A stretch of 64,000 bases of DNA from Neoechinorhynchus agilis (GCA_051530055.1 CM121341.1:5372784-5436783); one strand, 5' to 3'. Shown: positions 36,463 to 63,612, counted from the first letter of the stretch. Numbers and translations: made by a program. Notes: generated by a model from the sequence alone, not told the origin.

Positions 36463-39400
36463 ATGTTACGAAAATTGATGGAATTTTCCGACGAGAACAC
36501 AGATGATCCAACTGATCACTTGGATCCTCTCCAAGTGCCGATCCTTCGATTATCGAACGCAACACCGTCTCCTCTTTGTCCAACGGGAGAATGGCGAGTC
36601 GTAAGCCGCGGACACAGCGCAAACTGTGTAATCATTAGTTCAACAATACCTGATTGGAGTTTGCAGGAAAAAGAAGAAATCGATCTGATGATACCGATTG
36701 CACCATTGAAACGTCCTCCTAAACCCGTCGGAATGCGGTGCTGGATTGATCCGGCCGTTATCCGCGACGATCCGGACGACGGAGCTTTTCTTGTTTCGAA
36801 GGAACTTCAAAAGCAATATGAACTTCTTCAGCCTAATCTGAGATTTGAACATACGTGTAATAAACCTCGAGACGACATTGCTAAACTTCTTCGAGTTATA
36901 CGACACAGGTCTCCAAATGAACGGATGCTTATTCATTACAGCGGATACGGAATTCTACCTCCTAAAGACAGTGGAGAACTACACTTTCTTAACGGCGAAA
37001 TGCGAGACTACGTTCCGGTTTCCATTACTGACATTCATCGATGGGTATCTAATGGCCCGGCGATTGTAGTCGTTGACGCCGATAACTCTGGAGCTATCAT
37101 AAAGGCCGAAGTTGCAAAAGGTATCAGCGATAGAAACGATCATGCAACCGGTAAAATACCATTGATCGTGCTCACTTCATGTGATATTGGCGAATCCGTA
37201 CCGAAGTCGGACAAAATTCCCTTAGATGTATTCACGTCCTGTCTTACAACTCCTCTAAGGACAATGGCACATCTTTATAGGTTGTCCAATCGAGCTACTC
37301 ATTTCACTTCATTCATTGAGAAGCAATTAAACAAACGAGCTGAAATTAAAGGAGACTGGTCAACGATCAACGATCGAAAATCGAAACTTGGAGAACTCAA
37401 TTGGGCGTACACTGCTGTTACGGATGCAATTGCTTGGTCACTCGTCGATCGACATTTATTCAAGTGCTTTTTTAGACAAAACAGCCTTGTTGCAAGTCTT
37501 TTTAGAAATTATCTACTTGCATGTAGACTTTTGCCGGAATTCGGCATGCATCCAAAATGCTATCCACCAATATTCGGACAAAGCACACAACATGTTCAGA
37601 ATCATCCTCTGTGGGACTCTTGGGATTGTACAATAGAAGCACGGATAGTTCATGAAAACTTCACGTCCGATTGCGCATCGCCGGGTATTCTTTTTTTTGA
37701 TCAACAATTAAAAGCTTTTGAGGTAAGCCTCAGGACAGAAGGTGCCATGTCAATTGATGTGTCCACGCCGTCTATTCCGATTTTACTCCAGGTGCTTTTA
37801 TCGCAAGGGATCGGCAGTGGGCTCGTGAAATCTTCTTCGAATCAGTCAGATTTATGTTCTATCAATGCATTTCCGAGAGAGATTCTTATGTGATTGCCTG
37901 ATCCTTTGCGCAAAGTCAGACCCGTCGACAGCGTGGAATCGAGCTTCTTGTCGAATACTTCTCTAAAGGACGCAGTGCAGTGATGGCTGCTTTATCCGTT
38001 GGAGTGTTTCCTTATGTCCTTCATCTTCTTCAAGTAGTAAAATCCGATCCACCAATACCTCTTTTAAGTCTCTGTGCAAAGATTTTATCGACCGATCAAA
38101 CGGCGCAGCTTGACCTTCTTAAAAACGACCGAAAGGGTCTTCGAAATTTAACTAATAAAATATCGGGCAATATATTGGGAGGAGAAGAAAAAGACTCATT
38201 GACACTTACATTGTTCTGCTTGGCTTGTGCTACATTTAAATGTCCAGAGACTCAGAATGCTGCTCTGAAAGCAGATTTGATGCCGGCTTACTGCGTGATA
38301 TTAAACGAACCTGACTCGAGTCCTAGTCTGATCCGCCATGCCGCTCTGGCTATTTTATCGCTAACGGAGTTGCCGGGAGCTCTTGACCTCTTCAACCGAA
38401 GCAACGGAGTAGATATTGTTATTTCTAGAATCAAACGGGATTATCCCGTCTGTGTTAGACTAGCACTTTTGGCATTAGCATGCCGATTTGCGCATACTCT
38501 CGAAGGAGCTAGTCTTTTTGTACAATACTTAAATGATCCTGCACCTTGTATACGAAGAATCGTCCTTGGAGGTCTTGTGATTTTTGGAATGACTCATTAT
38601 TTGCGGTCAAGCGAATATAAAGATCCACAAATAAGTGGACGAAGATCTAGCATGCTATCGTCGATGTCCACAGGTCAGGGAATTGCTTATGACCGAGTCT
38701 GGCAAGGAATATGTCAACTTACTGACGACACCGTTGAAGAAGTGGCTTCCGCCGCTGCTCAATATGCAGCCACTGGACATATAAATGGTGCTCTCGTATA
38801 CGGTCCAAATGAGGTTTTACAAGACGCGATGGCGGAAGTTGCAAACGCCGCTTGTTATCCTTATTGGAACGATAAAGATTATACCAGCGGGATTGGCGAT
38901 CAAAAGACGAATTTGCTTAAGGCTTACCATACTACCTTTTCTTGATTCTCAGAAAGTCCCACCAATTATTTTCTTTATTTCGCTCTGACCAAATCTACAA
39001 TCTATAGATAACATCTTTACAACAATTTTTTTACTGAGTTCTGGATCATTTACTTAACAAACGTCAACAAAATTTGACAGCACCAATAACGAAAAAACAA
39101 AAGCAGCAATAAACCCTACAGTCAATTTCTCTTTTTCTTTCTACGTTCAATCTTTTAGTTTTCATTATATCCCTCATTCCGCACCACCCGTTGAATAGCC
39201 ACACTCAAGCGTTGGATGAGGTAGTTCCTTTGTCTGTGATCTCCGCTGGCTTTTATGAGTAGTCGGCCTATCTCCGCCCAAAATTTCTTCGCCGTCATTC
39301 AATGTTTTTGAAACACTAAATGGAATCGAACTCATTAGCCAAAGATCTTCTTCCACTTATCAGCCCACAAAAGCAAATCTGTAGATTTTAATGCCAACCA

Positions 39401-40546
39401 CTCGCTTATCTTCACGCAGTACCAAATCGTGAGTACACTTTCGTGTACTTCGGTTGAGCAATTACAGCAATTCTCAAAAATCACTCAATGTGCTATGACA
39501 ACCAAGGATGAATGCCGACGAGCGCGGTTCCATTCAGTTAGACCATGGATTGCTTATTCCTGCACTCAAGGATCTTACGTTGAAGATTTAAAAGGAAACA
39601 TTCTTCTTTTAAGGGACGAGCCGTGCAATGATTTCTGCTTCCTCAACGAGTATATAGACGAAACGATTGGATTGCCTTTGTTTCTCAGCGTTGAATGTGC
39701 CGTAAAGGACCGATGTGATATGTTCGTTTACGCATTGAACGACAATGGGACTCTTGAACAATGCTCTGGGTTCAGTTTGATCGTGGAAGATTTAGGGGAA
39801 AACGCTGTTGTCGACTATGGACAGACTAACTGTCGATTGTTGGTTTCAACGAGCACATCATCCAAAAGACGGCGGTTTTTCTTGCAACCTTTGAAAACCA
39901 CCGTCTCATACTTTGTATGACATGATTAACGAGTGCCAATTGGTCACTCATACAAGTGACCGATCGGATCAAATCACGGTTAACACACTTATAGACCATA
40001 ATCTATACGCGATTGGCTCACTCCGAGGACGTATTCGTTTATATGATATCCGCCAACGTCAGTCTGGATCAGTTCGATCTTGGATTGCTTCGGATCGGAT
40101 TCCCGTTCGAGCACTCAAATGTTTCCGACAATGAACTCGAAGCCATTCATGCCGTGGACGATTTAGGTTCGGTGAGCATGTGTATGCGAAACGGGAGAAG
40201 TCTTCAAGTGAGTCCCTTCACAAAGCCGCCAGTGTGTCCTGCAGTGTTCCAATCGTCTTCAAAGTCTCTTCTTGGCTTTTCTAATAGATTAGAGATTGTG
40301 AGTTTGGAAGGACGAGCTGTTCGATTGGCTGCAACGGTTGAGACTAACTTAATTGGTGGCTTTGTTTCCGAAGCGTCAAAGAAATGGAGAGAAAAGTCAC
40401 CGTCGACTCTTATTGGTGGTCAGCAAAACCGATATCCGTCCGTAACTGGCCTCTATGCTCACCAAGTTCTTCCCATTGTCGGGATCGTGGCTGATGGTGG
40501 TTGCTTGTCTGTATATGGCAATATAGAGCGAATTGGAGTGTCTTGA
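36463..40546 (+). CDS. RPTOR: Reduced, divergent Raptor (RNC-HEAT-WD40) with hairpin inserts, an in-frame TAG and a 1-bp frameshift
   Basis: RMLIHYSGYG, DVFTSCLTTPL, GELNWAYTAVTDAIAW, FRQNSLVASLFRNYLLA, HPLWDSWD, PILLQVLLSQ, ALSVGVFPYVL, GFYE*SA, RFHSVRPW and GRIRLYDIR. Confidence 0.88.
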
Positions 40547-40724
40547 CAAATCGAAGTGTATATGCATGCGAGATGGAATCGGGATGATGATTGGAACATA
40601 CTTTTATATCCTATTATTTTATCACTCAAAAGCTAGCCTCTTAAGCCACTAACCCTTAGGGTTTCATTTTTTGTTTTAAAAAGAACACTTCACCGGAATA
40701 TCGTAAAGATTTTGTTTTTCCATT

Positions 40725-43170
40725 TCGCCAAAGTGTCTAATTTTTACAGAAACAAAATTTGATAAATCATGCGGCCAAAAAAATCAAGTAGAATTCGCAC
40801 AAGAATTTAGGTCTTAAAGATTTTGTTATCGAAAATGGACACCTGGGCGGAATGTTGTAATGATAAAGAAAAAGATCTTCATTTCCGAGAGTTTTAGCCG
40901 TGCAAAAAACTAACAAGCAATTCCCAAGAAAGCCGTAAAACAGCGGAAGCTCTCGCATATAAGGATTTTCTTTTTACCACTACAACATTTCGCACAATTG
41001 TCCATTTTTTTAAAAAATTAGACAAATCATGCGGCCAAAAAAATCAAGTAGAATTCGCACCTGAATTTAGGTCTTAAAGATTTTGTTATCGAAAATGGAC
41101 ACTTGGACGGAATGTTGTAATGATAAAGAAAAAGATCTTTATTTCTGAGAGTTTTAGCCGTGCAAAAAACTAACAAGCAATTCCCAAGAAAGCCGTAAAA
41201 CAGCGGAAGCTCTCGCATATAAGGATTTTCTTTTTACCACTACAACATTTCGCACAATTGTCCATTTTTTTAAAAAATTAGACAAATCATGCGGCCAAAA
41301 AAATCAAGTAGAATTCGCACCTGAATTTAGGTCTTAAAGATTTTGTTATCGAAAATGGACACTTGGACGGAATGTTGTAATGGAAAAAAAGATCTTTATT
41401 TCTGAGAGTTTTACCCGTGCTAAAACTGTAGAAGTTCTGAGAAGCCGTCGTAGTAGGAAGCTCTATAACATATGGATTTCACACACCACAACATTTCGCT
41501 TCAATTATTATTTTCCGTATTGATAAATCATTTTGACCAAAAAAATCAAGTAGAATTCGCACAAGAATTTAGGTCTTAAAGATTTTGTTATCGAAAATGG
41601 ACACTTGGACGGAATGTTGTAATGGAAAAAAAGATCTTTTTTCCGGGAGTTTTACCCGTGCTAAAAGCTAACAAGCAATTCCCAAGGAAGCCGTAAAACA
41701 GCGGAAGCTCTCGCATATAAAGATTTTCTTTATTACAACATTTCGAACAATTGTCCATTTTTTAAAACAAAATTTGATAAATCATGCGGCCAAAAAATCA
41801 AGTAGAATTCGCACAAGAATTTAGGTCTTAAAGATTTTGTTATCGAAAATGGACACTTGGACGGAATGTTGTAATGGAAAAAAAGATCTTTATTTTGAGA
41901 GTTTTACCCGTGCTAAAAACTAACAAGCAATTCCCAAGGAAGCCGTAAAACAGCGGAAGCTCTCGCATATAAAGATTTTCTTTTTATCATTACAACATTT
42001 CGCACAATTGTCCATTTTTTAAAACAAAATTTGATAAATCATGCGGCCAAAAAAATCAAGTAGAATTCGCACAAGAATTTAGGTCTTAAAGATTTTGTTA
42101 TCGAAAATGGACACTTGGACGGAATGTTGTAATGGAAAAAAAGATCTTTATTTCTGAGAGTTTTACCCGTGCTAAAAACTAACAAGCAATTCCCAAGGAA
42201 GCCGTAAAACAGCGGAAGCTCTCGCATATAAAGATTTCTTTATCATTACAACATTTCGCACAATTGTCCATTTTTTAAAAAAAATTGATAAATCATGCGG
42301 CCAAAAAAATCAAGTAGAATTCGCACAAGAATTTAGGTCTTAAAGATTTTGTTATCGAAAATGGACACTTGGACGGAATGTTGTAATGGAAAAAAAGATC
42401 TTATTTCTGAGAGTTTTACCCGTGCTAAAAACTAACAAGCAATTCCCAAGGAAGCCGTAAAACAGCGGAAGCTCTCGCATATAAAGATTTTCTTTTTATC
42501 ATTACAACATCCCGATCAATTGTCCATTTTTTAAAACAAAATTTGATAAATCATGCGGCCAAAAAAATCAAGTAGAATTCGCACAAGAATTTAGGTCTTA
42601 AAGATTTTGTTATCGAAAATGGACACTTGGGCGGAATGTTGTAATGAAAAAAAGATCTTTATTTCTGAGAGTTTTACCGTGCAAAACTAACAAGCATTCC
42701 AAGAAGCCGTAAAACAGCGGAAGCTCTCGCATATAAGATTTTCTTTTTACATACAACATTTCGCCAATTGTCCATTTTTTAAAAAATTGAAAATCATGCG
42801 GCAAAAAATCAAGTAGAATTCGCACGAATTTAGGTCTTAAAGATTTTGTTATCGAAAATGGACATTGGCGGAATGTTGTAATGAAAAAAAGATCTTTATT
42901 TCTGAGAGTTTTACCCGTGCTAAAAACTAACAAGCAATTCCCAAGGAAGCCGTAAAACAGCGGAAGCTCTCGCATATAAGGATTTTCTTTTTATCATTAC
43001 AACATCCCGATCAATTGTCCATTTTTTAAAACAAAATTTGATAAATCATGCGGCCAAAAAAATCAAGTAGAATTCGCACAAGAATTTAGGTCTTAAAGAT
43101 TTTGTTATCGAAAATGGACACTTGGACGGAATGTTGTAATGGAAAAAAAGATCTTTATATCCGAGAGTTT
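40725..43170. repeat. Satellite, about 258-260-bp monomer with a long internal hairpin, about 9.5 copies
   Basis: Repeated gataaatcatgcggccaaaaaaatcaagtagaattcgc. Internal arms aaaatggaca..atgttgtaatg / cattacaacat..tgtccatttt. Confidence 0.97.
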
Positions 43171-43334
43171 TAGCCTTGTGCTTTTTGAAAATCGAGCGCC
43201 GAAATACGTCCAAAATTAAGATATGACCACGATTTCGTGCCATTCCGAGTCGATACGCGACGTTGGCCTCGCGCCGAATTCGCGATAGAAAATTGAAAAA
43301 CGAAAAGGTGACAACAAATAAAATATATTTTATT

Positions 43335-43950
43335 GCTATATTTCGCGAGGTGCAGAAAGTCGAGATTCAAACTCTAGAAATGTTCGCTCTGGAGCAGCAT
43401 TTTAGGATGATGAATAATAAACGAAGGCTTCCTCTTTCTAAAAAAATTTATTAAGGGATGTTAAAAGCAGAGAGAGCGACGAGGCTATTTAAATGCTTAA
43501 AACCGTTGTAGTTTTAAAAAAACAAGAAAGTTCTTTTTCAAGAAAAAGATGTGACGTCACTAACCGTGCCGATCTGGGCTAAAAAGTAGGACACGAACGA
43601 ATTATTTTTCATTGTTTGATCACTTCGTTTATTGCCGATCATCGGATTTGTTGTTTGACTTTGTCCATTATTCAGTTAGCGTCATTGGTGATTTGCGATT
43701 CGTTTCGTTAATTGTTCGTATTGTGGAGAAAGTCGAGATTCAAACTCTAGAAATGTTCGCTCTGGAGCAGCATTTTAAGCTGATGAAAAATAAGCGAAGG
43801 CTTCCTCTTTCCGACTAAATTTACTCGGGGATGTTAAAAACAGAGAGAGAGCGACGAGGCTATTTAAATGCTTAAAACCGCAGTAGTTTTAAAAAAATAA
43901 GAAAGTTCTTTTTCAAGAAAAAGACGTGACGTCACCTACTGTGCCGATGT
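43335..43950. repeat. Direct duplication of about 230 bp
   Basis: agaaagtcgagattcaaactctagaaatg..gtgacgtcac at about 43335 and 43728. Confidence 0.85.
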
Positions 43951-44229
43951 AATTGGTTTGGCTTTATGCCTAAAAATAGGCCGGACAAGAAGGGACAAAT
44001 AAAAATTTATTGATGAAAACGAAACCGGCTTGTCAGTAAAGCTTAAAATAGGTTATTTTTGCGATTCGTCTGGTCATTTGTTCGTATTCTGCCAGTGGAA
44101 CTATATTTTCGGTGAGGAGCTCCTTTAATTTTTTCCCACAATTTCAATCGGCTATTCGACATGATCGGTCTTTTCATTTTTTCCTGTACGATAGTCTCCC
44201 TTTTTCCACGTCATTGATTAGTTAATGAA

Positions 44230-45049
44230 TTTCATCAACGTCTAACTTGACGTTTTCTTTATGGTACGAAATATCACTTTTAACGTTTCGCCACGATCAA
44301 AGGTTTGCGAATTAATCGATAATAAACCATCATATTTAAAGGATACGATAGCTAGCGATTGTAGGACGGACAGGCTCTGGAAAAAGCTCCATTCTGAACA
44401 TGATAGAAAGAATGGGTATCGTGGAAGGGATCGTTATTTTGGATGGAGTGGATACATCGCTGTTAAATTTAAGAGAACTGCGACGGAGAATATGTATAAT
44501 TCCTCAGGTGATCTTTTCAAACACCAAATTCGAGACAAGGTCGCTAATAATATTTTAGAAACCAATATTCATCAGTGGAACCTTAAGAGACAATCTTGAC
44601 ACTTTCAAAGAGGTCAGTGATGAATACATATGGACTATTCTTAAAAGCGTATGGATCTAAAAAACGAAGTTCGAATCCATTTCTCCGTGCTTAGGTACAA
44701 ATGGACGAAGTAATAAAGCGAATTGTTGGCGAAGAAGGATTGGACGGTTTTGTGCGTGGATCCGGTTTCGGGGAACGCTTCAGTTTCGGACAACTTCAAC
44801 TTCTCAGTATGGCTCGTGCAATCATTCGAAAAAGAAAACTTGTTATCATGGACGAAGCCACATCTAATCTGGAAGCTGAAACAGAAAAAATAATTCAAAG
44901 AGTTATTAGACACGAATTAGGTCATTGATGAAGGTCGAATCGTGGAAATCGGAAATCCTGTCGAATTAGCAATGAACAAAGCGTCGAGGTTCAGAATGTT
45001 AGTCATCGAGGACGGTCTTCGTCCAGAAAGACTGTATCAATCCTTCTGA
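44230..45049 (+). pseudogene. Inverted partial copy of ABCC NBD2 exons fused to the terminal exon
   Basis: LAIVGRTGSGKSS, IIPQ|KPIFISGTLRDNLD, FSFGQLQLLSMARA, VIMDEATS, then VIDEGRIVEIGNP..stop. The ECTVITIAH segment is missing. Confidence 0.8.
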
Positions 45050-45106
45050 AAGCTCAAACGCCATAAAAACTAAAGTACCACCGCTGTTCATTATTTTTCT
45101 TAAGCA

Positions 45107-49155: not shown

Positions 49156-49174
49156 ATAAAAAGACTACCGGCTG

Positions 49175-51534: not shown

Positions 51535-52950
51535 TCAACAAAGTTCATAGACACTCTTTTTGACGATGTTCAGTCCAAAATATTCATGAAGTTGGTCAGT
51601 CAGTTCTGTTTCGTGATCCGAGAGATTAATAACAAGTCCAGTTCCGTTGATTCGAGCAGCCCGTCCAACTCGATGCAAGTATGTGTCGTAATCAACCTGA
51701 TCGGGCTGCTCATTGAGAGTAGGAATATCGTAATTGATCACTACATTGGTGCCGCTTAGATTAATACCTCTGGACAAAATATTCGTCGTAATAAGAACTC
51801 TCCATAAACATTCTCGGAACTTGTTTAGAGCCGCCATTCTCTCTATAACCGAATTATTTCCAGTTAAAACCCCGACATCTTTAACACCTTGTTGCTCAAA
51901 GTCACATTTAATAAATTGAGCCGACTGACGAGTTCGACAAAATATTACGCATTTGGAAACGACAATTCGTTCAAAGATACAGCGCAATATTTTCAACTTT
52001 TCGTCGCGAGAAGCACACAATATTTCCAAATGCGTCGTCTCAGGATTCATCGACATTTTTCGGTCCAGTGCGAACACTTTTAATTCGTCTGGATATTTGA
52101 CATGCCATTTTACACGTTCAATCACATTTTCTGTGAACGTAGCTGATACAAATAGAAGGGAACATTGATCAGGTAAAGCTTCGATTACTCTAAAACAAAT
52201 CTCATAATGTCCTGGCATCGTTACCATCATGTCGACCTCATCTTTCACAAAGAACGACCTCTTTCCTCACAAGAGACCGTTTTTTGTCATTAAAACTAAA
52301 CATTTCACCATGTCCCATTCGATCAGTTCTTTGGACATTATTTCTTGAATCCGGCCGGAAGTACCAATCAGAATCTCCTTTGATCCGCGATTCTTAGGAG
52401 GCCATTTGTCTGACATCTCATAAACCGCAAGACCGATCAAATTCCTACCTACGCATTGCGCAACATCAGCTATTTGATGAGCCAGTTCAACCGTAGGAAC
52501 CAAGCATAATGCTTGGGATTTTTGTTGCGCTCGTTCGAGAATTCCGAAAATGGGTACCAAATAAGCAAGGGTTTTCCCTGCACCATTCCAAGCCTGAGCG
52601 AGAATGCGAAATGATTTCGGTGATCCAGTACGAATCTCGTTCCAAATCTGCGTTTGAATAGCTGTTGGTCGCCGTATTCCCATTTGCAATAGATTAAAAA
52701 CCACTTGCTCCGAAAACCCAAAACCACTGAGTCCATCATTCATTTCAATGTTCACGTTTTCAATAGTGGCACAATCGCCAACCAACGATGTGGTTTCTAA
52801 AGATTTAGTTAAATGGTCGATCGGCCAATCGCCGTCATCTGCCGGTAAGTGGTGAAGTTGAGGTAAAAACAATTGAGGTATTAGAAACCACGGATCCTCG
52901 TCGGTTTCTTCATATCGATCAGGATTCATGATCGGAATCATCTGAAGCAA
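51535..52950 (-). CDS. DDX19/DDX25 (Dbp5)-like DEAD-box helicase with one 48-nt hairpin insert
   Basis: GIRRPTAIQ, AWNGAGKT, PTVELAHQ, CLVL|DEVDMM, SAT, VIFCRTR, LITTNILSRGIN and YLHRVGR. Confidence 0.88.
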
Positions 52951-53429
52951 CGTGACTTATGGTTATGCGATCAGATCTCGCAGAATCGAAAGTTGAGACC
53001 AATGACGATGTTTAAAGACTTTTTATATGGCGGGAAAAATTGATTTTAGAGGCACAATCTTGTGCCTTCTTTATCAAGGTTGTTTCCCAAGTTCGAAAAA
53101 TGCAGAATATCTTTAAAACAAATTCAAATTTCAAGCTATATAAAAACACTAATACCAATCTACAAAAAAGACGAACGTTCAGTTAATTTGTTAACACTCA
53201 AATGCATGGAGACGCAGATCGATAGCGTCCATTACTAACAAACTGAAGATGACCCCGACGATATTCGAAACGTCTTTAATAAATAATCATTTACCGCGGG
53301 CGTAGACCTAAACAATAATTCCAATAAAGGACGGAAAAAATTCGAAAGAGAATGTTTCCTCTTTCGAACTACTTCCTAATAATAAAAGAATCTTTAATCG
53401 GGATTATGTTAAGATATATTTCGCGAGGT

Positions 53430-53934
53430 ACGTAATTCTATGAACCTTGCTTGGAAGAAGACGAAAAAAAACATTTAAATTGCCATTAAATCAATGACAT
53501 GGCTAACGCTTCCTGGAACGCTTAATGAATCTCTTAAGTTGATTTCCACGCCGAAATCCTTTTTAATAATGCTCAAGCAAAAAATACGGTTAGAAACACC
53601 AGTAACGCTGAGACGATTGGTCGTAAGTATTTGGGAGATATGTTCATTCATAGGGGGTTCCAGATCGAAGCCGTAAAGGAAGAAGAGCGGATACGGAAAT
53701 CAGAAGAAGAGCAGAGACAGACCATGCTTAAGTTTGAAAGCACGAGAATGACTGTTGAAATGTTCAATGAGTGGAATGAAATCGTCAAAAAGTGCGGAGA
53801 TCGCAAGAAGATTGACGGTTATCGAGGAGGAAGATATTGACATTAAGGAAGGCGAAGATCTCATATTCGATGAAGATGGTGATCTTGATGTAGACGAATC
53901 TTTATTTGTTGATGATATCGACGCTTTTGAATGA
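53430..53934 (+). CDS. RWDD1/Gir2-like protein; 5' boundary uncertain
   Basis: YLGDMFI, EEERIRKSEEEQR..TRMTVEMFNEW and acidic tail DVDESLF..DAFE resemble RWDD1. Confidence 0.55.
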
Positions 53935-54513
53935 TTAACTTGATTTGTAATAGTGCGAATCGCTGCTTGATTTTTCCAGGCGCATGTCTCAATTATAATT
54001 TTAATTTGACATTTGTACGACCTACAGATATAATTGATTTATTTGCCTCGCTTTCGCCGTTTTACGGCTTCAACTGGGCAATCTAAAATGTGAGATGGGG
54101 AACACAAACAGGTCACAACATCCACATCGACTCCACTACCTCATCCTCAGTTCATTTCCAATTCGAACCCATCGCCTCTCCCGAAATCAACAGCGCCTCC
54201 GCTATCGCTAAATCCACCGGGTCTCAGGTTCCCGGATAAAACATATTTAATTGAAATATAGTACATTTATTTTGCCGTTCACATGTAAAAAATACTGTGC
54301 AAGTATTCTGTACGAGCTAGAACTACAGTCGAACTTCTTTTTATTCAAATTTTGTACTCAATGCCTTTCGACAGCATGCGAGGTACGCAAAGAGCGTGTC
54401 CAGGAGCCTGAATATCGCCGAAACTGAAATCGGTCGCTTGCTGGACGCGTTTCTTCGAAGCTCGCAGACGCAGCAGTTCGCCTTTTATCATCAATGGACA
54501 GTCTCGCCCTTGC

Positions 54514-55200
54514 ATTGCTTCGGATCGGATTCCCGTTCGAGCACTCAAATGTTTCGACAATGAACTCGAAGCCATTCATGCCGTGGACGATTTAGGTTCG
54601 GTGAGCATGTGTATGCGAAACGGGAGAAGTCTTCAAGTGAGTCCCTTCACAAAGCCGCCAGTGTGTCCTGCAGTGTTCCAATCGTCTTCAAAGTCTCTTC
54701 TTGGCTTTTCTAATAGATTAGAGATTGTGAGTTTGGAAGGACGAGCTGTTCGATTGGCTGCAACGGTTGAGACTAACTTAATTGGTGGCTTTGTTTCCGA
54801 AGCGTCAAAGAAATGGAGAGAAAAGTCACCGTCGACTCTTATTGGTGGTCAGCAAAACCGATATCCGTCCGTAACTGGCCTCTATGCTCACCAAGTTCTT
54901 CCCATTGTCGGGATCGTGGCTGATGGTGGTTGCTTGTCTGTATATGGCAATATAGAGCGAATTGGAGTGTCTTGACAAATCGAAGTGTATATGCATGCGA
55001 GATGGAATCGGGATGATGATTGGAACATACTTTTATATCCTATTATTTTATCACTCAAAAGCTAGCCTCTTAAGCCACTAACCCTTAGGGTTTCATTTTT
55101 TGTTTTAAAAAGAACACTTCACCGGAATATCGTAAAGATTTTGTTTTTCCATTTCGCCAAAGTGTCTAATTTTTACAGAAACAAAATTTGATAAATCATG
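54514..55200 (+). pseudogene. Segmental duplicate of the RPTOR 3' end and flank (copy of 40084-40770), running into the 258-bp satellite
   Basis: Near-identical to 40084 onward. It lacks the extra C found at 40125-40126. Confidence 0.95.
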
Positions 55201-57545
55201 CGGCCAAAAAAATCAAGTAGAATTCGCACAAGAATTTAGGTCTTAAAGATTTTGTTATCGAAAATGGACACCTGGGCGGAATGTTGTAATGAAAGAAAAA
55301 GATCTTCATTTCCGAGAGTTTTACCCGTGCTAAAAACTAACAAGCAATTCCCAAGGAAGCCTTAAGACAGCGGAAGCTCTCGCATATAAAGATTTTCGTT
55401 TTATCATTACAACATCCCGCCAATTGTCCATTTTTTAAAACAAAGTTTGATAAATCATGCGGCCAAAAAAATCAAGTAGAATTCGCACAAGAATTTAGGT
55501 CTTAAAGATTTTGTTATCGAAAATGGACATTTGGGCGGAATGTTGTAATGGAAAAAAGATCTTTATTTCTGAGAGTTTTAGCCGTGCAAAAAACTAACAA
55601 GCGATTCCCAAGAAAGCCGTAAAACAGCGGAAGCTCTCGCATATAAGGATTTTCTTTTTACCACTACAACATTTCGCACAATTGTCCATTTTTTTAAAAA
55701 ATTAGACAAATCATGCGGCCAAAAAAATCAAGTAGAATTCGCACCTGAATTTAGGCCTTAAAGATTTTGTTATCGAAAATGGACATTTGGGCGGAATGTT
55801 GTAATGATAAAGAAAAATATCTTTATTTCTGAGAGTTTTAGCCGTGCAAAAAACTAACAAGCAATTCCCAAGGAAGCCTTAAGACAGCGGAAGCTCTCGC
55901 ATATAAAGATTTTCGTTTTATCATTACAACATCCCGCCAATTGTCCATTTTTTTAAAACAAAGTTTGATAAATCATGCGGCAAAAAAATCAAGTAGAATT
56001 CGCACAAGAATTTAGGTCTTAAAGATTTTGTTATTGAAAATGGACACCTGGGCGGAATGTTGTAATGATAAAGAAAAAGATCTTTATTTCTGAGAGTTTT
56101 ACCCGTGCTAAAAACTAACAAGCAATTCCCAAGGAAGCCTTAAGACAGCGGAAGCTCTCGCATATAAAGATTTTCTTTTTATCATTACAACATCCCGATC
56201 AATTGTCCATTTTTTAAAACAAAATTTGATAAATCATGCGGCCAAAAAAATCAAGTAGAATTCGCACAAGAATTTAGGTCTTAAAGATTTTGTTATCGAA
56301 AATGGAAACCTGGGCGGAATGTTGTAATGATAAAGAAAAAATCTTCATTTCCGAGAGTTTTACCCGTGCTAAAAACTAACAAGCAATTCCCAAGGAAGCC
56401 TTAAGACAGCGGAAGCTCTCGCATATAAAGATTTTCGTTTTATCATTACAACATCCCGATCAATTGTTCATTTTTTAAAACAAAATTTGATAAATCATGC
56501 GGCCAAAAAAATCAAGTAGAATTCGCACAAGAATTTAGGTCTTAAAGATTTTGTTATCGAAAATGGACATTTGAGCGGAATGTTGTAATGATAAAGAAAA
56601 AGATCTTTATTTATGAGAGTATTACCCGTGCTAAAAACTAACAAGCAATTCCCAAGAAAGCCGTAAAACAGCGGAAGCTCTCGCATATAAGGATTTTCTT
56701 TTTATCATTACAACATCCCGATCAATTGTCCATTTTTTAAAACAAAATTTGATAAATCATGCGGCCAAAAAAATCAAGTAGAATTCGCACAAGAATTTAG
56801 GTCTTAAAGATTTTGTTATCGAAAATGGACATTTGGGCGGAATGTTGTAATGGAAAAAAAGATCTTTATTTCTAAGAGTTTTACCCGTGCTAAAAACTAA
56901 CAAGCAATTCCCAAGGAAGCCTTAAGACAGCGGAAGCTCTCGCATATAAAGATTTTCTTTTTATCATTACAACATCCCGATCAATTGTCCATTTTTTAAA
57001 ACAAAATTTGATAAATCATGCGGCCAAAAAATCAAGTAGAATTCGCACAAGAATTTAGGTCTTAAAGATTTTGTTATCGAAAATGGACATTTGGGCGGAA
57101 TGTTGTAATGATAAAGAAAAAGATCTTTATTTCCGAGAGTTTTAGCCGTAGAACGGCAAAAGCTTTAGAATAAAGATTTTTCCTCATCTATGCCATTCCA
57201 CACAAGTGTACGTTTTCGATAACAAAAACTTGAACACCTAAAGTCTTGCTAAATTCTACCTGATTTTCCAGCCGTATGATTAATTTTTTATTATCGAAAA
57301 TGGACACTTGAGCGTGCTGATGCAAGGATAAAAAGAAAATCCTCATTTTCGAGAGTTTTCGCAGTCTTACTGCTACCTTGGGAATTGCTTGTTTGTTTTT
57401 AGCCGTAAGACGCGAAAGCTCTCGGAAATGAAGATTTTCTTTTTATCCTTACAACATCCATCCAAAATGTCCATTTTCGATAAAAAAAACTTGATCAAAT
57501 ATTCGGCTGCAAAAACAAGTAGAATTTCCCAAGACTTTAGGTTTT
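55185..57545. repeat. Second 258-bp satellite array (about 7.5 copies) followed by diverged inverted units
   Basis: Same monomer as 40725-43170. 57150-57290 is a diverged reverse complement of the monomer start. Confidence 0.95.
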
Positions 57546-57944
57546 CATAGTACGACGCACGGCAACTAATGTATGAAAATTCAATAAGCTTCTACAGTCT
57601 CTTAGTTGTTCGCTTAGCATTTTGTTGATTTAAATTATCGTCCATTCCAAACAATGGCATTTTCTTCTTAAAATTCCTCAAAAATATTAGTATTCCATCA
57701 AAACTAAGAGGGAATGAGCAAAAGAATTTTAATTGTACCTCACGAACTATGCTAAAATTATACGTGCTCTCACCGGAGGTAGTGGAGTCCCTAGTCAAGT
57801 CTTTCAAAATAAACGTTTCATGCTCTGAAGCTTACTGAATTTACTTCTAGGGATGTTGATCGAGAGAGCGCCCTAAAAATCGTATGGATCGCCTATGTGT
57901 TGATTTCTCATTCGAAAGCTACGATTTATAGACGCAGTGATCAT

Positions 57945-58180
57945 TTTGTTTGAAGATTGAACTGTTTATATTGGTTGTTTTATATGGCGTAGAGAAATCA
58001 AAATGATTTTGAGTTTAAAACTGCCGATTGGTATCGAAGGCGCACAATCTTGTAAGGCCTTTTGATCAAGATTGTTAAAGCGAATAAAACACTTGCAAAC
58101 AACCTTGATAAAACGAAGGTTTTAAAGATTGTGTGCCATCGAAACCAATCGAAGATTTTAAAATAAAATCATTTTATATC
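57945..58180. mobile_element. Palindromic MITE-like element, same family as 16155-16300
   Basis: tttgaagattgaactgtttatattgg..aaatcaaaatgatttt..cacaatcttg..aagattgtg..taaaataaaatcatttta. Confidence 0.65.
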
Positions 58181-58221
58181 TTGTATTAATATCTTCAGGG
58201 AAAAGATTCTTTTGGTAGTTA

Positions 58222-58362
58222 TCCTCGCCCGGGTTTAAATTCACAGATTAGATTAATTTACATATTTTAGATGTTGTTAAACCTTGTGGAAATGTCAGAA
58301 TTATCCGAGCCATGAAATATCAGGGAAATAAATCTATGAATTTAAATCCGAATGGGGATAAC
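58222..58362. repeat. Small fold-back
   Basis: gttatcctcgcccgggtttaaattcacagatt / aatctatgaatttaaatccgaatggggataac. Confidence 0.65.
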
Positions 58363-58789
58363 AAACGAAAAAAAACATTTCAATTTCTTCGCCAAAAACA
58401 ACCAGTGATCATTTTCCCGGATATTGTTCTATTGAAGATATTTCTCGTCCGAAATACGATTAATAAGACATTTTCAACCGGGAAAATGATCACTACATAA
58501 TCGATTCCATCAATGATTGCATATTTCAACCATTACAGTTTTATTAATTGTCTTTCTTCGTTGTAGCGGTCTCTTAAAGTAAACTTTAAAGTCTATCGCT
58601 TCATTCATTGCTAAATCGATCTTCTGGCTCGATTATGACCCTTTTTTAGATCAGGAAAATGAATTCGCACTTTTTTGGAGATATCGTACGGATATTCCAG
58701 TTTATTGATCAATTATAAAGGATTTATTGAGCTTGTCCATTTATTTCGGGAAAACGATTCATGCTGTAGATGTTTACCAACGTTTTCCT

Positions 58790-60570
58790 GCCCCTACAAA
58801 TTCATAAAAAATCTTTAAAAAAATCAAATAAGACTGAATAATCAGACCAAAAGTATTTAAATGTGAAAACTTCTATTGAAGGCGGAGGTATTATTATTTT
58901 TTCCTTAAATTTGCACTTAAAAAATCTTTAAAAAAAATCAAATGAGACTATGAATAATCAGACCAAAAGTATTTAAATGTGACAACTTTTGTTGAACGCG
59001 GAGGTATTATTATTTTTCCTTAAATTTGCACTTAAAAAATCTTTAAAAAAATCAAATAAGACTATGAATAATCAGACCAAAAGCATTTAAATGTGACAAC
59101 TTTTGTTGAACGCGGAGGTATTATTATTTTTCCTTAAATTTGCACTTAAAAAATCTTTAAAAAATCAAATAAGACTATGAATAATCAGACCAAAAGTATT
59201 TAAATGTGACAACTTTTGTTGAACGCGGAGGTATTATTATTTTTCCTTAAATTTGCACTTAAAAAATCTTTAAAAAAATCAAATAAGACTATGAATAATC
59301 AGACCAAAAGTATTTAAATGTGACAACTTTTGTTGAACGCGGAGGTATTATTATTTTTCCTTAAATTTGCACTTAAAAAATCTTTAAAAAATCAAATAAG
59401 ACTATGAATAATCAGACCAAAAGTATTTAAATGTGACAACTTTTGTTGAACGCGGAGGTATTATTATTTTTCCTTAAATTTGCACTTAAAAATCTTAAAA
59501 AATCAAATAAGACTGAATAATCGACAAAAATTTAAATTGAAACTTTAAAAAATTTCACTTAAAAAATCTTTAAAAAAATCAAATAAGACTATGAATAATC
59601 AGACCAAAAGTATTTAAATGTGACAACTTTTGTTGAACGCGGAGGTATTATTATTTTTCCTTAAATTTGCACTTAAAAAATCTTTAAAAAAATCAAATAA
59701 GACTATGAATAATCAGACCAAAAGTATTTAAATGTGACAACTTTTGTTGAACGCGGAGGTATTATTATTTTTCCTTAAATTTGCACTTAAAAAATCTTTA
59801 AAAAAATCAAATAAGACTATGAATAATCAGACCAAAAGTATTTAAATGTGACAACTTTTGTTGAACGCGGAGGTATTATTATTTTTCCTTAAATTTGCAC
59901 TTAAAAAATCTTTAAAAAAATCAAATAAGACTGAATAATCAGACCAAAAGCATTTAAATGTGACAACTTTTGTTGAACGCGGAGGTATTATTAATTTTTT
60001 CCTTAAATTTGCACTTAAAAATTCATAAAAAATCAAATAAGACTATGAATAATCAGACCAAAAGTATTTAACTGTGACAACTTTTGTTGAACGCGGAGGT
60101 ATTATTATTTTTCCTTAAATTTGCACTTAAAAAATCTTTAAAAAAATCAAATAAGACTGAATAATCAGACCAAAAGTATTTAAATGTGAAAACTTCTATT
60201 GAAGGCGGTATTATTATTTTTCCTTAAATTTGCACTTAAAAATTCATAAAAAATCTTTAAAAAAATCAAATAAGACTATGAATAATCAGACCAAAAGTAT
60301 TTAAATGTGACAACTTTTGTTGAACGCGGAGGTATTATTATTTTTCCTTAAATTTGCATTTAAAAAATCTTTAAAAAAATCAAATGAGACTATGAATAAT
60401 CAGACCAAAAGCATTTAAATGTGAAAACTTTTGTTGAACGCGGAGGTATTATTAATTTTTTCTTTAAATTTGCACTTACAAATTCATAAAAAATGAAGTA
60501 AGACCATGAATAATCAGATTAAAAGTATTTAACTGTGACAACTTTTGTTGTTCGCAGAGGTATTATTAAT
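58790..60570. repeat. Satellite, about 118-bp monomer, about 15 copies
   Basis: Repeated gactatgaataatcagaccaaaagtatttaaatgtgacaacttttgttgaacgcggagg. Confidence 0.97.
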
Positions 60571-60725
60571 TTTTTAACACTTACTATGAAGAATCGAACG
60601 CTGAGAACGAGAATTTTTTTTTGGTATTGGTTATCATTTTTATTCTTAGACCTTATTATTGGCTCGTTTATCGATGCAATTTCAGATTTAATTCAAGTTC
60701 AATATTAACCAGCCTATCAAATCAC

Positions 60726-63612
60726 ATGACTGCGTCTTACCTCAGCGCGGGAGTAGCCTGCCGCCTGAATCCGGACGAGTTGGTTTCCCTTCTCCGAACG
60801 GACGTTAAACGTGGACTAAGTGAGAATGAAGCGCAGAATCGTCTTAGAAGATTCGGCCACAATCAATGTTTATCGGGAAAGCACGAAAGCGTTTTTCACA
60901 AATACGTTTCTCAATTCCAGCAACCGATGATCCTTTTATTGATATTTTCTGCTTTAATATCGTTTGTTCTTCGGCAATACGACGACGCAGCGAGTATTAC
61001 ACTTGCCGTCCTTATCGTGGTTACAGTCGCGTTCATACAAGAGTACCGATCGGAACGAGCAATAGAAGCACTTAATAATCTTCTTCCGCCAGTTACTACT
61101 GTACTCCGGGACGGTCTAGTAAGAGTACTGGACGCAGATCTCATAGTTCCTGGGGATATAATTGTTCTAGAGCAAGGGGACCGTGTTCCTGCTGACGGAC
61201 GCCTTATTGATTCCGTTGACCTTCTTGTCGATGAGTCAATGTTTACTGGGGAAAGTGAAACGGTCTCAAAGAGGGCTGAGTTTGTTGAAGATCGCCGATC
61301 TAAACTTGAAGGAATCCATGAGCGCCTGAATGTTGTCTATATGGGTTCAATGATTGCTCATGGACGAGCCAGAGTGATTGTAGTCTCCACCGGCGAACAT
61401 TCAGAGTTTGGTTGTGTACTTAGAATGATGGACGAACAACGAGTACCGGACACTCCTATTAAAACACAAATGGACCGGCTCGCAAAGCAACTTACAACAG
61501 CTTCTTTGATCATCATTGCCATCATATCCGCCTATGGGGTATTTGTGCAGAAAAAGCATGCTCTAGAGATGCTGCAGGTGGGTGTTTCACTCGCAGTGGC
61601 AGCCATTCCGGAAGGACTTCCTATCGTAGTTACCGTAACTCTTGCACTTGGTGTCTGTCGACTCGCTAAACATAATGCAGTTGTTAAGAAACTTGCAGCC
61701 GTTGAGACGATTGGGAGTGTAAGTACCATTTGTGCCGACAAGACCGGAACGCTGACTATGAACACTATGGAATTGAGCGTTACATTGATCAAATCGGCTA
61801 GTAATGGTGCCAAATGGCGAACCACCAATGATCCCAGTGAAGCGGTGGAACTTGTAAAGGCCGGAGTACTTTGTAGTAATGCCTATTTTGGTCCGGATGG
61901 TAAACCGAGAGGTCAACCAACTGAATGCGCTTTTCTTGCTATCGCAATGAAAATCAATGGACTTGTAGGAAACATAGAAAATAGCTTTAAACGACTTGAA
62001 GAGTGGCCCTTTAGTGCGGAAACTCGGTGGATGGCCGTTCGTGTAATGAGCAGTTTTTCTTGGGTTTTTCATTCTCTTTCATTTTATGTTGTTGTTTTTA
62101 AGGTTGCTTAAAGGTGAACTGCTCGTGTAATTGACTTGGTGGGCAAAGAAATCGTGATAGCAAAAGGGGCACCAGAGGATATTCTTGGTGGTCATTGTTC
62201 ATCGTCGATAAAACAATCGGACGAGGAGGCAGTAGCAGCATTCCTGGCAGGACCAGCGCGGGGCCTTCGTACATTGGCACTCGCGATGGGTCCATCGATC
62301 CACAATCTTGAACTGATAGGAGTAGTAGGAATTCAAGATCCACTAAGACCCAGTGCTCAGAGAGCATTTACGTGCCATTCGAACCTTCGCATAATCACAG
62401 GAGATGCCCGTGAGACCGCTGTTGCTATTGGAAGTCAGCTAGGAATTGTTGACGAGGAAAGTGCACGAGTCCTCGCTATATCAGGCGATGATGCTGTAAA
62501 GCAAGGACAGCTAGCTATTGAACCTGCTCGTGTGTTCTACCGAACAAGTCCCAAACAAAAGTTAGCTATTATTAAAAGCCTTCAACGATGTGGTCATGTA
62601 GTTGCAATGATTGGCGATGGCGTAAGTTAGGTGTGTTCATTGGGTTGGAGTTTTTTTTCGTTTTAAATGGAAACATCCTGACTCAAATGATGCAGTTGCT
62701 CTCAGAGCAGCCAATGTGGGTATCTCAATGGGTTCAGCGGCGTCGGACGTAAGCCGTGAAGCCGCTGATCTTGTACTCGTTAATGACGACTGTGGGGCGA
62801 TTGCTCATGCCATAATTCATGGACAAGCAATTTATCGAAATATCGAGAACTTTATTTGTTTCCAACTAAGCACTAGCGTGTCCGCTCTATCACTAATCGC
62901 GTTGACTACCTTCTTTTCTTCGCATTCGTCAAGTCCTCCTTTGAATGCCATGCAGATCTTATGGATAAACATTCTAATGGACGGACCACCGGCTCAGAGT
63001 CTAGGAGTCGAACCACCAATTGATACTGGAAATATGAGAGAAAAAGGACAACGTAGTAGCGTGTTCCTTGGTTCCCGTTTGATGAAAGACGTCTTCATGA
63101 AGGCGTTCATCATTGTATTCGGTACTTTGAGTGTTTAAGCGAGTTTTTTGGGAATGGGACATCTTTATTCTCATATGACTCGGTATCGTAACGAACTTCT
63201 CAACGGACGACAACCAACGACAGCAACATTTACAGCGTTTGTTCTTTTTGATATGTTCAATGCGCTCAGTTGTAGGTCCAGGGATACACCCGTCGTATTT
63301 GGACCAGGGTCCTTAGGCCTTTTACGAAATCGACCGTTCGTTTATGCGGTAAGTCTTTGTCTTGCTGGTCAAGCGCTAGTCATCTATTGGCATCCTCTGC
63401 AATATATATTCCAAACCGAACCACTCCCTCTCAAAAGACTACTCATGCTCGTACTTCTTTCTTCGAGTGTATTCGTAGTTTCAGAATTCAAAAAATGGAT
63501 TCGAATCTGGAGAAATTCCGGACATCAGTGTCTTTTTGATTCTGTCTTTACAAGAATCCGGTGCTTTCTCTCAACAAGGCTCACAAATCAAAAGGTGCGA
63601 GCATTTGTTTGA
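60726..63612 (+). CDS. ATP2C1: Secretory-pathway Ca2+/Mn2+ P-type ATPase (SPCA/PMR1) with three hairpin inserts
   Basis: QEYRSE, PGDII, VPADGRL, TGESE, AIPEGLP, CADKTGTLT, KGAPE, DPLRP, ITGD, GDG|ND, LNAMQILWINILMDGPPAQSLGVEP and FDMFNALSCRS. Confidence 0.93.

What the first reader, a model, noticed from the sequence alone, without database searches (positions are those of the whole stretch)
37806..63185. Candidate second intron class: non-GT-AG fold-back inserts with A...YA ends in conserved genes
Seen in sequence: at least seven junctions in RPTOR, DDX19 and SPCA need removal of a 43-107 nt segment to restore frame or a conserved motif, and each segment base-pairs end to end. Best boundaries (exon|insert|exon): 37806-37912 CA|AGG..GCA|A; 39255-39337 T|ATG..TTA|GC; 39866-39908 AA|AAG..TCA|T; 52243-52290(-) TTA|ATG..AAA|GAT; 62046-62129 GTA|ATG..GTA|ATT; 62625-62685 GTA|AGT..TCA|AAT; 63138-63185 TA|AGC..GTA|T. 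Shared pattern: the exon usually ends in A, the insert starts with A, a 7-17 bp stem begins within 0-3 nt of the 5' end and ends 2-4 nt before a terminal YA, often with 2-9 nt direct repeats. The inserts are not similar to each other in sequence and lack the U12 RTATCCTT donor. Known analogues: structured non-conventional introns of euglenids, MITE-derived non-canonical introns of the larvacean Fritillaria borealis, IR/DR introners of Amoebophrya, and TA-bounded IESs of Paramecium. Inference: this animal removes a structure-defined insert class by modified spliceosomal, non-spliceosomal or DNA-level excision. The end pattern differs from those I recall for the analogues.
Basis: partly seen in the sequence, partly recalled or inferred. 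Interest (0 to 1): 0.92.

Follow-up and report, generated by a model that had tools for sequence, protein, structure and literature searches.

The report
Hairpin non-GT-AG introns, confirmed in RNA
In the thorny-headed worm Neoechinorhynchus agilis, short hairpin-forming inserts without the usual GT...AG intron ends split essential genes, and public RNA data show that three of them are cut out of the message exactly, a kind of intron so far described in animals only for one group of tunicates.

Summary
The window is Neoechinorhynchus agilis (Acanthocephala), chromosome CM121341.1. De novo RNA contigs from three runs span the whole SPCA (calcium-pump) mRNA. No placement allowed by the boundary repeats gives GT-AG, GC-AG or AT-AC. 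Whole-genome reads at 14-17x keep all three inserts and show no joined form. Removal is therefore at the RNA level, not the DNA level.

The spliced mRNA encodes an uninterrupted 897-aa pump with GDGVNDA restored. Each insert is closed end to end by a helix (z -3.0 to -4.6). The cuts lie 0-3 nt outside the helix foot.

The other four junctions have no RNA check:
- The DDX19 and RPTOR 43-nt inserts are well supported by sequence.
- 39255-39337 is not supported.

The signatures of Fritillaria, Euglena and U12 introns are not met. The enzyme is unknown.

This scan had already noted the same insert class in many other windows of this genome, always without transcript evidence; the RNA proof is new here. 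I found no paper describing it.

The parts
62039..62131 (+). SPCA intron A. 84 nt are removed from the RNA. The register is ambiguous over a 9-nt direct repeat (62039-62122 up to 62048-62131). The terminal helix pairs 62046-62056 with 62116-62126.
   Evidence: the joint 62038>62123 is seen in the contigs of 3 RNA runs and in 0 of about 14 WGS reads; z -3.0; duplex -18.9 kcal/mol, 0/4000 random windows as strong. It carries in-frame stops.
62624..62686 (+). SPCA intron B. 61 nt are removed (62624-62684, +0..2). It splits the invariant GDGV|NDA motif. The terminal helix pairs 62625-62631 with 62677-62683. Possible ends are AA..TC, AG..CA or GT..AA.
   Evidence: the joint is seen in 3 RNA runs and in 0 of about 17 WGS reads; z -3.2. 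GDGVNDA is restored in the spliced ORF.
63136..63185 (+). SPCA intron C. 48 nt are removed (63136-63183, +0..2). It is flanked by TA and carries an in-frame TAA. Possible ends are TA..GG, AA..GT or AG..TA.
   Evidence: the joint is seen in 3 RNA runs and in 0 of about 14 WGS reads; z -4.6; p 0.005.
60686..63905 (+). SPCA (ATP2C-like Ca/Mn P-type ATPase) mRNA as seen in the RNA contigs. It has four exon blocks, ATG at 60726 and an 897-aa ORF after the three removals. The unspliced reading stops after residue 461.
   Evidence: table 8.
52243..52291 (-). DDX19-like DEAD-box helicase insert D. It is a 48-nt, near-perfect hairpin carrying a stop, placed between ...LVL and DEVD. The register is ambiguous by 1 nt (AA..AA or AT..AA). 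No RNA check.
   Evidence: Pfam DEAD positions 1-123 end at the insert and 124-164 start just after it; z -3.9; a 36-nt GT-AG alternative exists and would add MTKN.
39865..39908 (+). RPTOR insert E. It is a 43-nt hairpin bridging frame 0 to frame 1 in the C-terminal (WD-repeat) part. The register is ambiguous by 1 nt. No RNA check.
   Evidence: z -3.6; p 0.002; frame 1 at 39913-40089 matches raptor HMM 1036-1096; the public model instead reads through the hairpin and uses GT-AG 39915-39994, which removes part of that homologous stretch and reads the rest in the wrong frame.
37800..37913 (+). RPTOR insert G, revised. 113 nt are removed (37800-37912 or 37801-37913; AT..CA or TC..AA). A helix of about 17 bp pairs 37802-37818 with 37893-37910. 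No RNA check.
   Evidence: homologues and the HMM (436|435 overlap) need a single SQ; z -2.3, and the cuts lie 1-3 nt outside the helix. Alternatives are GG..AG 37807-37919 (same protein) and GT-AG 37792-37919 (deletes the invariant VLLSQ).
39255..39337 (+). It is not supported as a member of the class.
   Evidence: stops in all three frames over 38943-39428; z -0.65; p 0.11; no raptor homology nearby.
34419..34462 (-). Control: an ordinary 44-nt GTAAGT...AG intron in the neighbouring DUF543 gene. Its ends are unpaired.
   Evidence: it is the only GT-AG model that fits the annotated product length; 12 nt at the 5' end and 7 nt at the 3' end are unpaired, z -1.2; p 0.24.

Best explanation
Shown: these are true introns removed at the RNA level. 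In three SPCA cases the pre-mRNA loses exactly the hairpin insert plus one copy of a short boundary repeat. That restores an 897-aa reading frame, while the genomic DNA keeps the insert.

Shown: the boundaries cannot be GT-AG, GC-AG or AT-AC. In every case a terminal helix places the two cut sites within 0-3 nt of its foot. An A stands at both boundaries, giving the register N|A-A-G/T ... Y|A, or equivalently A|A-G/T ... Y-A|.

Inferred origin: independent insertions of small foldback (MITE-like) DNA with short target duplications (TA, AA, A, CGCAA, or a 9-mer). Removal recreates the pre-insertion sequence.

Inferred machinery, my best guess: the worm's major spliceosome, with relaxed demands on terminal dinucleotides. 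The helix does the job of bringing the 5' and 3' sites together, as in the only animal precedent, Fritillaria, where U2-type splicing was shown to be required. Ordinary GTAAGT...AG introns and TTTCAG acceptors coexist in the same window, so the standard machinery is intact.
For: Three independent RNA runs each give one full-length SPCA contig that skips 84, 61 and 48 nt. The same runs have zero depth on the non-transcribed stretch 60560-60674, so they carry no visible genomic DNA. WGS run X8 covers the inserts at 13.6-17.4x with no joint and no dip in depth. The stems (<=17 bp) and boundary repeats (<=9 nt) are shorter than the assembler's 31-mers, so the joints must be in the reads.

Non-canonical ends. 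Reading frame and motifs. Helices: with the canonical 44-nt intron as a contrast.

Coexisting canonical signals: GTAAGT..AG; a TTTCAG acceptor used at 60685|60686.

[quoted passage not shown] PMC11282704 describes their TIR/TSD (MITE) origin.

The k-mer shares in the RNA runs (0.87-0.89 for SPCA) match the 0.906 expected for fully spliced mRNA.
Against: Nothing here shows a lariat, a branch point or dependence on snRNAs. Both splice sites sit at or inside a stable helix, and in the 43-48-nt introns almost every base is paired, which leaves little room for U1/U6 pairing or an accessible branch site. The three verified introns share no possible dinucleotide pair other than A..A or A..Y as first and last base. 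The Fritillaria signature (AG/AC or AG/AT, YAY triplets) is not met.

A MITE origin is not demonstrated. No second copy of any insert was found (the window only), and the boundary repeats vary from 1 to 9 nt.

Only one gene has direct RNA evidence.
Confidence: 0.5

Rival explanations
1. The removal is structure-guided and non-spliceosomal. An endonuclease recognises the foot of the terminal helix and cuts both strands there, and an RNA ligase (for example RtcB) joins the exons. This is what is suspected for the nonconventional introns of euglenids and some diplonemids.
For: The cut sites lie 0-3 nt from the helix foot on both sides in all five well-defined cases. No conserved terminal dinucleotide exists. 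The tiny introns are almost fully paired. The ends show a pyrimidine|A tendency and short direct repeats, as described for euglenid nonconventional introns (PMC11282704). For diplonemid noncanonical introns with paired ends, U1 is thought not to be involved (PMC12621601).
Against: No such pathway is known for any animal mRNA intron. The genetically defined Euglena code (PMC12501133) is not met at any allowed register. There is no bulge-helix-bulge geometry and no IRE1-type twin loops. The one animal precedent is spliceosomal (PMC13326754).
Confidence: 0.35
2. The inserts are excised at the DNA level, like IES elements, in the nuclei that make the mRNA. The mRNA would then be copied from insert-free DNA.
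For: Two of the three verified inserts are TA-bounded, as Paramecium IESs are. The reporting threshold (3 reads or 10%) would miss a small excised fraction.
Against:: WGS reads show no joined form at any of the three sites, about 45 spanning read depths in all. Depth inside the inserts equals that of the flanks, while the RNA is spliced in every contig. The published DNA came from whole worms, somatic and germline tissue together (PMC12690905).
Confidence: 0.04
3. The joints are an artefact, or the mRNA comes from another locus. Reverse transcriptase may jump across the hairpins between the direct repeats, the assembler may skip them, or an insert-free paralogue or retrocopy may be the transcribed gene.
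For: Reverse transcriptase is known to skip structured segments between short repeats (general knowledge, not tested here). All three joints have 2-9 nt repeats.
Against: All three inserts are absent from the only contig in each of three runs, at depth 43-109, with no unspliced contig. Repeats of 2 nt are too short to drive near-complete jumping. Stems and repeats are shorter than k = 31. No insert-free DNA exists in the WGS reads. The contigs match this locus with 0-2 differences, at least one of which is an allele also seen in the DNA reads. Frames downstream of each insert are conserved for hundreds of codons, which requires removal in vivo.
Confidence: 0.03
4. For the four junctions without RNA data, nearby canonical GT-AG sites are used instead, as in the public gene models, or the gene parts are separate or decayed.
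For: GT-AG alternatives exist: 37792-37919 (RPTOR 1), 39915-39994 (RPTOR 3, the public model) and 52242-52277 (DDX19). RPTOR may really be split into two ORFs.
Against: Each alternative damages conserved sequence. The first deletes the invariant VLLSQ. The second misreads the stretch that matches the raptor HMM. The third adds four residues inside the DEAD motif II strand, where the Pfam profile is contiguous. The identical architecture is proven non-canonical in SPCA, 10-25 kb away.
Confidence: 0.15

Closest known systems
Non-canonical (AG/AC, AG/AT) MITE-derived introns of the larvacean tunicate Fritillaria borealis (Henriet et al. 2019; Soo et al. 2026, PMC13326754; review PMC11282704)
   Same: Both are in an animal. 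Both are short introns lacking GT-AG, with inverted-repeat ends and a short duplicated motif at both boundaries, so that removal restores the target site. They sit at lineage-specific positions inside conserved exons, are efficiently removed from RNA, and break standard gene prediction. In one register, most worm introns also start with AG.
   Different: The worm introns end in YA (or Y), not AC/AT, and the YAY triplets are absent. They coexist with ordinary GT-AG introns rather than replacing 95% of them. The phylum is different (Acanthocephala, a spiralian). The tunicate introns are shown to need the U2 spliceosome and duplicated U2AF; nothing is known of the worm's machinery.
Nonconventional introns of euglenids (Euglena gracilis/agilis; PMC12501133, PMC11282704) and paired-end noncanonical introns of hemistasiid diplonemids (PMC12621601)
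   Same: In both, the ends base-pair and bring the splice sites together. Terminal dinucleotides are variable, short direct repeats lie at the junctions, there is a pyrimidine|purine tendency at both cuts, lengths vary, and conventional introns are present alongside.
   Different: The Euglena code (CDG at +4..+6 paired with CHG, 5-6 nt before a purine-starting exon) is not present. In the worm the helix starts 0-3 nt from the cut rather than at +4/-6. The other organisms are protists, not animals. Circular excision products are known there and untested here.
IR/DR 'introner' non-canonical introns of Amoebophrya and the introner elements of algae and dinoflagellates (PMC7789003, PMC11282704)
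   Same: They are transposon-like intervening sequences with inverted repeats and 3-5 nt direct repeats that are removed from RNA despite odd ends.
   Different: Those occur as multi-copy families with conserved TIR motifs. The worm inserts in this window are all unrelated, and no second copy was found. Amoebophrya appears to lack U1; the worm's snRNAs were not examined.
TA-bounded internal eliminated sequences (IES) of Paramecium
   Same: They are short, TA-bounded, interrupt coding sequence at any phase, and are removed precisely.
   Different: IESs are removed from DNA. Here the DNA keeps the inserts and only the RNA lacks them. Not all of the worm inserts are TA-bounded.

Membership tests
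Canonical U2-type introns | GT-AG (or GC-AG) terminal dinucleotides | tested here: not met
   none of the 10+3+3 registers allowed by the RNA joints of SPCA introns A, B and C is GT-AG or GC-AG. A and B can start with GT only if they end in TC, GT or AA.
U12-type (minor) introns | AT-AC or GT-AG termini with the /RTATCCTT donor and a TCCTTAAC-like branch site | tested here: not met
   no AT..AC register exists. The 5' ends read (AATGAG, AAGTTA, AAGCGA) do not match the donor.
Fritillaria-type non-canonical introns | AG/AC or AG/AT termini with a YAY triplet before the 5' site and as the last three intron bases (PMC13326754) | tested here: not met
   A cannot start with AG. B and C give AG..CA and AG..TA. 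No YAY triplet lies in any boundary repeat.
Fritillaria-type non-canonical introns | Inverted-repeat ends plus a short duplicated target motif (MITE-like architecture) | tested here: met
   Searches show terminal helices. Searches show boundary repeats of 1-9 nt.
Fritillaria-type non-canonical introns | Removal depends on the U2-type spliceosome | not testable with these tools
   This needs inhibitor, knock-down or lariat data.
Euglenid nonconventional introns | Splicing code 5'-N3-CDG ... CH'G-N5-6 | R-exon (PMC12501133) | tested here: not met
   I read this. Only intron A at register +9 has CAG at +4..+6, but its CTG then lies 10 nt from the end and the exon starts with T. B and C have no CDG at +4..+6 in any register.
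Euglenid nonconventional introns | Intron ends base-pair and bring the splice sites together | tested here: met
Euglenid nonconventional introns | Excised as full-length circular RNA, after the conventional introns | not testable with these tools
   No reads of excised introns were available, because read laying is capped at one call.
Paramecium-type IES / programmed DNA elimination | The insert is absent from (somatic) genomic DNA | tested here: not met
   the WGS run X8 shows depth inside the inserts of 13.6-17.4x, equal to the flanks, and 0 reads with the joined form.
tRNA-type (bulge-helix-bulge) or IRE1-type mRNA introns | Two 3-nt bulges separated by a 4-bp helix, or twin 7-nt loops carrying the cut sites | tested here: not met
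   folds show a single helix closing the intron, with the cuts at its foot. The flanks are direct repeats, so there is no exon-exon outer helix.
Introner / MITE families | Many near-identical copies in the genome | tested here: inconclusive
One search found no second copy of any insert in the 64-kb window.

The most novel reading that the evidence does not exclude
An animal has a second mRNA intron-removal pathway that is independent of the spliceosome. It would read only RNA shape, a helix that closes the intron, and would cut at the helix foot and religate. This would be the metazoan counterpart of the still-unexplained euglenid and diplonemid nonconventional splicing, and it would let foldback DNA insertions into exons survive as instant introns.
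Probability: 0.33. Interest if true: 0.96.

Novelty: new variant of a known kind. Interest (0 to 1): 0.88.

Why it matters
1. It adds a second, unrelated animal lineage, and the first protostome, in which introns without GT-AG ends are removed efficiently. Recent papers still name Fritillaria as the only animal exception (PMC12621601). Convergence can now be tested. Is the spliceosome re-tuned again, for example by U2AF duplication or snRNA modification? Or is a structure-reading enzyme at work?

2. It offers a clean system for an old open question: how new introns arise. Here foldback insertions into coding exons appear to be tolerated at once, because the hairpin itself marks them for removal.

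3. It has a practical consequence. Gene predictors that insist on GT-AG break these genes. RPTOR is deposited as three 'hypothetical proteins', and one model uses a false GT-AG intron. The low BUSCO completeness (47%) and the large 'gene losses' reported for this species (PMC12690905, PMC12256650) may be partly inflated. They should be re-evaluated with junction-agnostic RNA mapping.

4. The public RNA-seq of 74 worms already holds the data for a genome-wide catalogue.

Tried and rejected
- RNA evidence for RPTOR and DDX19 through proteins called on RNA assemblies did not work. Searches returned only the NCBI genome model (466 aa), so no transcript-derived proteins of this species are in the collections. 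Read laying is limited to one call, and I spent it on SPCA.
- A search for other copies of the inserts in the window found only chance 9-16-mers. Look-ups by sequence in the scan's notes were blank.
- An Rfam scan of the window for snRNAs or known structured RNAs gave no match.
- The first hairpin-plus-ORF scan of the window was swamped by the 22.6-23.7 kb tandem repeat and timed out. A stricter minus-strand scan gave one new candidate, in the MOB gene. The candidate 20889-21010 was dropped because only its upstream half has weak Pfam support.
- The 'uninterrupted terminal stem' statistic was too crude, because the stems have single mismatches. I replaced it with arm-to-arm duplex energy.
- The Euglena code, the Fritillaria YAY/AG-AY signature, U12 termini, BHB/IRE1 geometry and a uniform 2-nt RNase III-type overhang were all checked against the allowed registers. 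None fits all verified introns.
- The 11-nt leader as a nearby cis exon: the 11-mer occurs at 58091-58101, but no GT follows it, so this stays unresolved.

Full report
**Identity of the window.** The RPTOR N-terminal ORF is 98% identical over its full length to NCBI 'hypothetical protein ACOME3_001170 [Neoechinorhynchus agilis]'. That protein is encoded on GCA_051530055.1, chromosome CM121341.1, 5,399,246-5,420,676. This confirms the organism name that earlier notes of this scan gave. Those notes describe the same kind of hairpin-ended non-GT-AG insert in more than a dozen other windows of this genome. Every one of them says no transcript could be checked.

**The decisive result.** I laid three RNA runs (X10-X12, kept as de novo Logan contigs) and one whole-genome shotgun run (X8, raw reads) on window 60560-64000.
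- Each RNA run gives one long contig (3038, 2881 and 3111 nt; word depth 109, 61 and 43). Each contig matches the SPCA locus from 60686 to 63754-63983 with 0-2 differences.
- Each contig skips exactly three segments: 62039-62122 (84 nt), 62624-62684 (61 nt) and 63136-63183 (48 nt).
- Boundary repeats of 9, 2 and 2 nt make the cuts ambiguous by that many places.
- The 16 possible registers give the ends listed. None is GT-AG, GC-AG or AT-AC.
- The WGS reads cover the inserts at 13.6-17.4x, the same as the flanks, and no read shows a joined form.
- The RNA runs have zero depth on the untranscribed stretch 60560-60674, so they hold no visible genomic DNA.
- Stems (17 bp or less) and repeats (9 nt or less) are shorter than the assembler's 31-mers, so the joints cannot be graph artefacts.
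- The k-mer shares of SPCA in four RNA runs (0.87-0.89) match the 0.906 expected for a fully spliced message.
- The spliced sequence encodes an uninterrupted 897-aa pump with DKTGTLT and a restored GDGVNDA. The unspliced reading stops after residue 461.

The inserts are therefore in the DNA, absent from the mature RNA, and non-canonical.

**Structure.**
- All three verified introns fold end to end (z -3.0, -3.2, -4.6 against dinucleotide shuffles). So do the DDX19 insert (z -3.9) and the RPTOR 43-nt insert (z -3.6).
- The pairing energy between the first and last 20 nt is -14.5 to -18.9 kcal/mol, against -5.8 +/- 2.8 for equally long random windows of the same genes' exons. That gives p <= 0.013 each, and 0/4000 for intron A.
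- The ordinary 44-nt GTAAGT...AG intron of the neighbouring DUF543 gene has free ends.
- Relative to the helix foot, the number of unpaired intron bases on the two sides sums to 1-3 in all five cases. The cuts therefore sit directly at the base of the helix.
- In all six good cases an A occurs at both boundaries. The junction can be written N|AAG/AAT ... Y|A or, shifted by one, A|AG/AT ...
- The inserts share no other sequence and have no second copy in the window.

**The four junctions without RNA data.**
- *DDX19, 52243-52290(-).* The insert carries a stop. The Pfam DEAD profile runs 1-123 up to the insert and 124-164 right after it, so exact removal is the parsimonious reading. A 36-nt GT-AG intron inside the hairpin remains possible; it would add MTKN before DEVD.
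- *RPTOR, 39866-39908.* Removal moves frame 0 to frame 1. A raptor HMM built from 45 homologues matches frame 1 at 39913-40089 (positions 1036-1096, E 1e-5). The public model instead reads through the hairpin and uses a GT-AG intron at 39915-39994, which removes part of that homologous stretch and reads the rest in the wrong frame.
- *RPTOR junction 1.* Homologues read LLSQ-x-HR-x-RAL without gaps. Both tblastn and the HMM overlap by the two residues SQ. So 113 nt, not 107, must go. Removal of 37800-37912 (or +1) also puts the cuts 1-3 nt outside the 17-bp helix, like the verified introns. A GG..AG version (37807-37919) gives the same protein. The GT-AG version (37792-37919) deletes the invariant VLLSQ.
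- *39255-39337.* This is not supported. The surrounding 38943-39428 has stops in every frame, there is no homology, and the end pairing is at chance level.

**How it most likely works.** RNA-level, precise excision is shown. Everything about the enzyme is inference.

I rate a relaxed major spliceosome, helped by the helix, at about 0.5.
- It is the mechanism demonstrated for the only animal precedent (PMC13326754).
- Ordinary introns and acceptors are in use in the same window.
- The loops are T-rich.

I rate a structure-reading endonuclease plus ligase at about 0.35.
- No terminal dinucleotide is shared.
- Both sites are buried at the foot of a stable helix.
- The 43-48-nt introns are almost fully paired.
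- The geometry recalls the euglenid and diplonemid introns, for which U1 involvement is doubted (PMC12621601).

DNA-level excision (about 0.04) and artefact or paralogue explanations (about 0.03) are disfavoured.

The variable boundary repeats (A, AA, TA, CGCAA and a 9-mer) and the unrelated sequences suggest independent insertions of foldback DNA whose removal restores the target site. A MITE family origin is not demonstrated.

**Comparison with known systems.** I tested the defining signatures rather than recalling them.
- The Euglena code N3-CDG...CHG-N5-6|R (PMC12501133) is absent at every allowed register.
- The Fritillaria AG/AC-AG/AT termini and YAY triplets (PMC13326754) are absent.
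- U12 termini and donor are absent.
- There is no bulge-helix-bulge or IRE1 twin-loop geometry.
- IES-type DNA loss is contradicted.

The shared features are paired ends, short duplicated boundary motifs, lineage-specific positions in conserved exons, and efficient removal. This places the worm introns functionally beside Fritillaria and Euglena, but not in either family.

**Novelty.**
- The genome and transcriptome paper of this species never uses the word intron. A second paper on its gene losses does not either.
- 'Acanthocephala' plus 'non-canonical introns' returns no paper. Related searches found nothing relevant.
- A December 2025 paper still names Fritillaria as the animal exception.

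I rate this a new variant of a known kind: hairpin-ended, probably transposon-derived non-canonical introns, now in a spiralian parasite, with their own end rule and an unknown enzyme.

**Limits.**
- Direct RNA proof covers one gene and three introns.
- The runs are labelled 'RNA?' by the tool. Their contig limits, their zero intergenic depth and the published 74-library RNA-seq study argue that they are RNA.
- Contigs hide rare unspliced forms.
- The WGS test would miss an excised DNA fraction below about 10-13%.

Noticed in passing
window 60680-60726 (and 58091-58101): All three SPCA RNA contigs stop matching the genome at 60686, directly after a TTTCAG acceptor and 40 nt before the ATG at 60726. 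They carry 5-11 extra 5' letters (ACTTGCAAACA in X10). This is transcript-level support for a leader joined at that acceptor, possibly the spliced-leader trans-splicing that other windows of this scan only guessed at. The same 11-mer lies at 58091-58101, but AC follows it, not GT, so a cis 5' exon is neither shown nor excluded.
   Followed up: partly
window 38943-39494: RPTOR seems to be in two ORFs. The N-terminal part (raptor HMM 83-746) ends at a stop at 38943. About 480 nt with stops in all frames follow. The C-terminal WD part restarts near the ATG at 39495, behind a TTACAG. The k-mer share of four RNA runs over 36400-40600 (0.90-0.92) leaves no room for a 480-nt intron. The gene may therefore be split (fission or operon-like pair); this is untested. 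NCBI annotates three separate hypothetical proteins (466, 320 and 323 aa).
   Followed up: partly
window 2041-2093 (-): A further candidate of the same class. A 53-nt end-paired insert (AATGACC...GGTCTTA) splits a MOB/phocein gene between Pfam Mob1_phocein positions 85 and 92. No boundary repeat, z only -1.5, no RNA check.
   Followed up: partly
window 40105-40142 (+): RPTOR needs one more frame change (frame 1 to frame 2) near 40090-40134. A 37-nt segment closed by TTCGAG/CTCGAA (ends GT..AA or TT..AG) would provide it. An assembly indel is the alternative. No RNA check.
   Followed up: partly
window 62650: There is a length polymorphism in the T-run of the loop of verified intron B (+TT in 8 of 17 WGS reads). 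The loop appears free to vary; I saw no variant in the stems.
   Followed up: no
window 36463-37893 (NCBI model ACOME3_001170): The deposited 466-aa model is 10 residues shorter than the open 476-codon frame, so it contains a predicted 30-nt intron inside an ORF that is open anyway. This is probably another prediction artefact.
   Followed up: no
window 22600-23650, 30500-32550, 60000-60500: Several tandem-repeat arrays (periods of about 134, 111 and 130 nt) with strong internal inverted repeats. They dominated my hairpin scan. They lie outside the genes studied.
   Followed up: no
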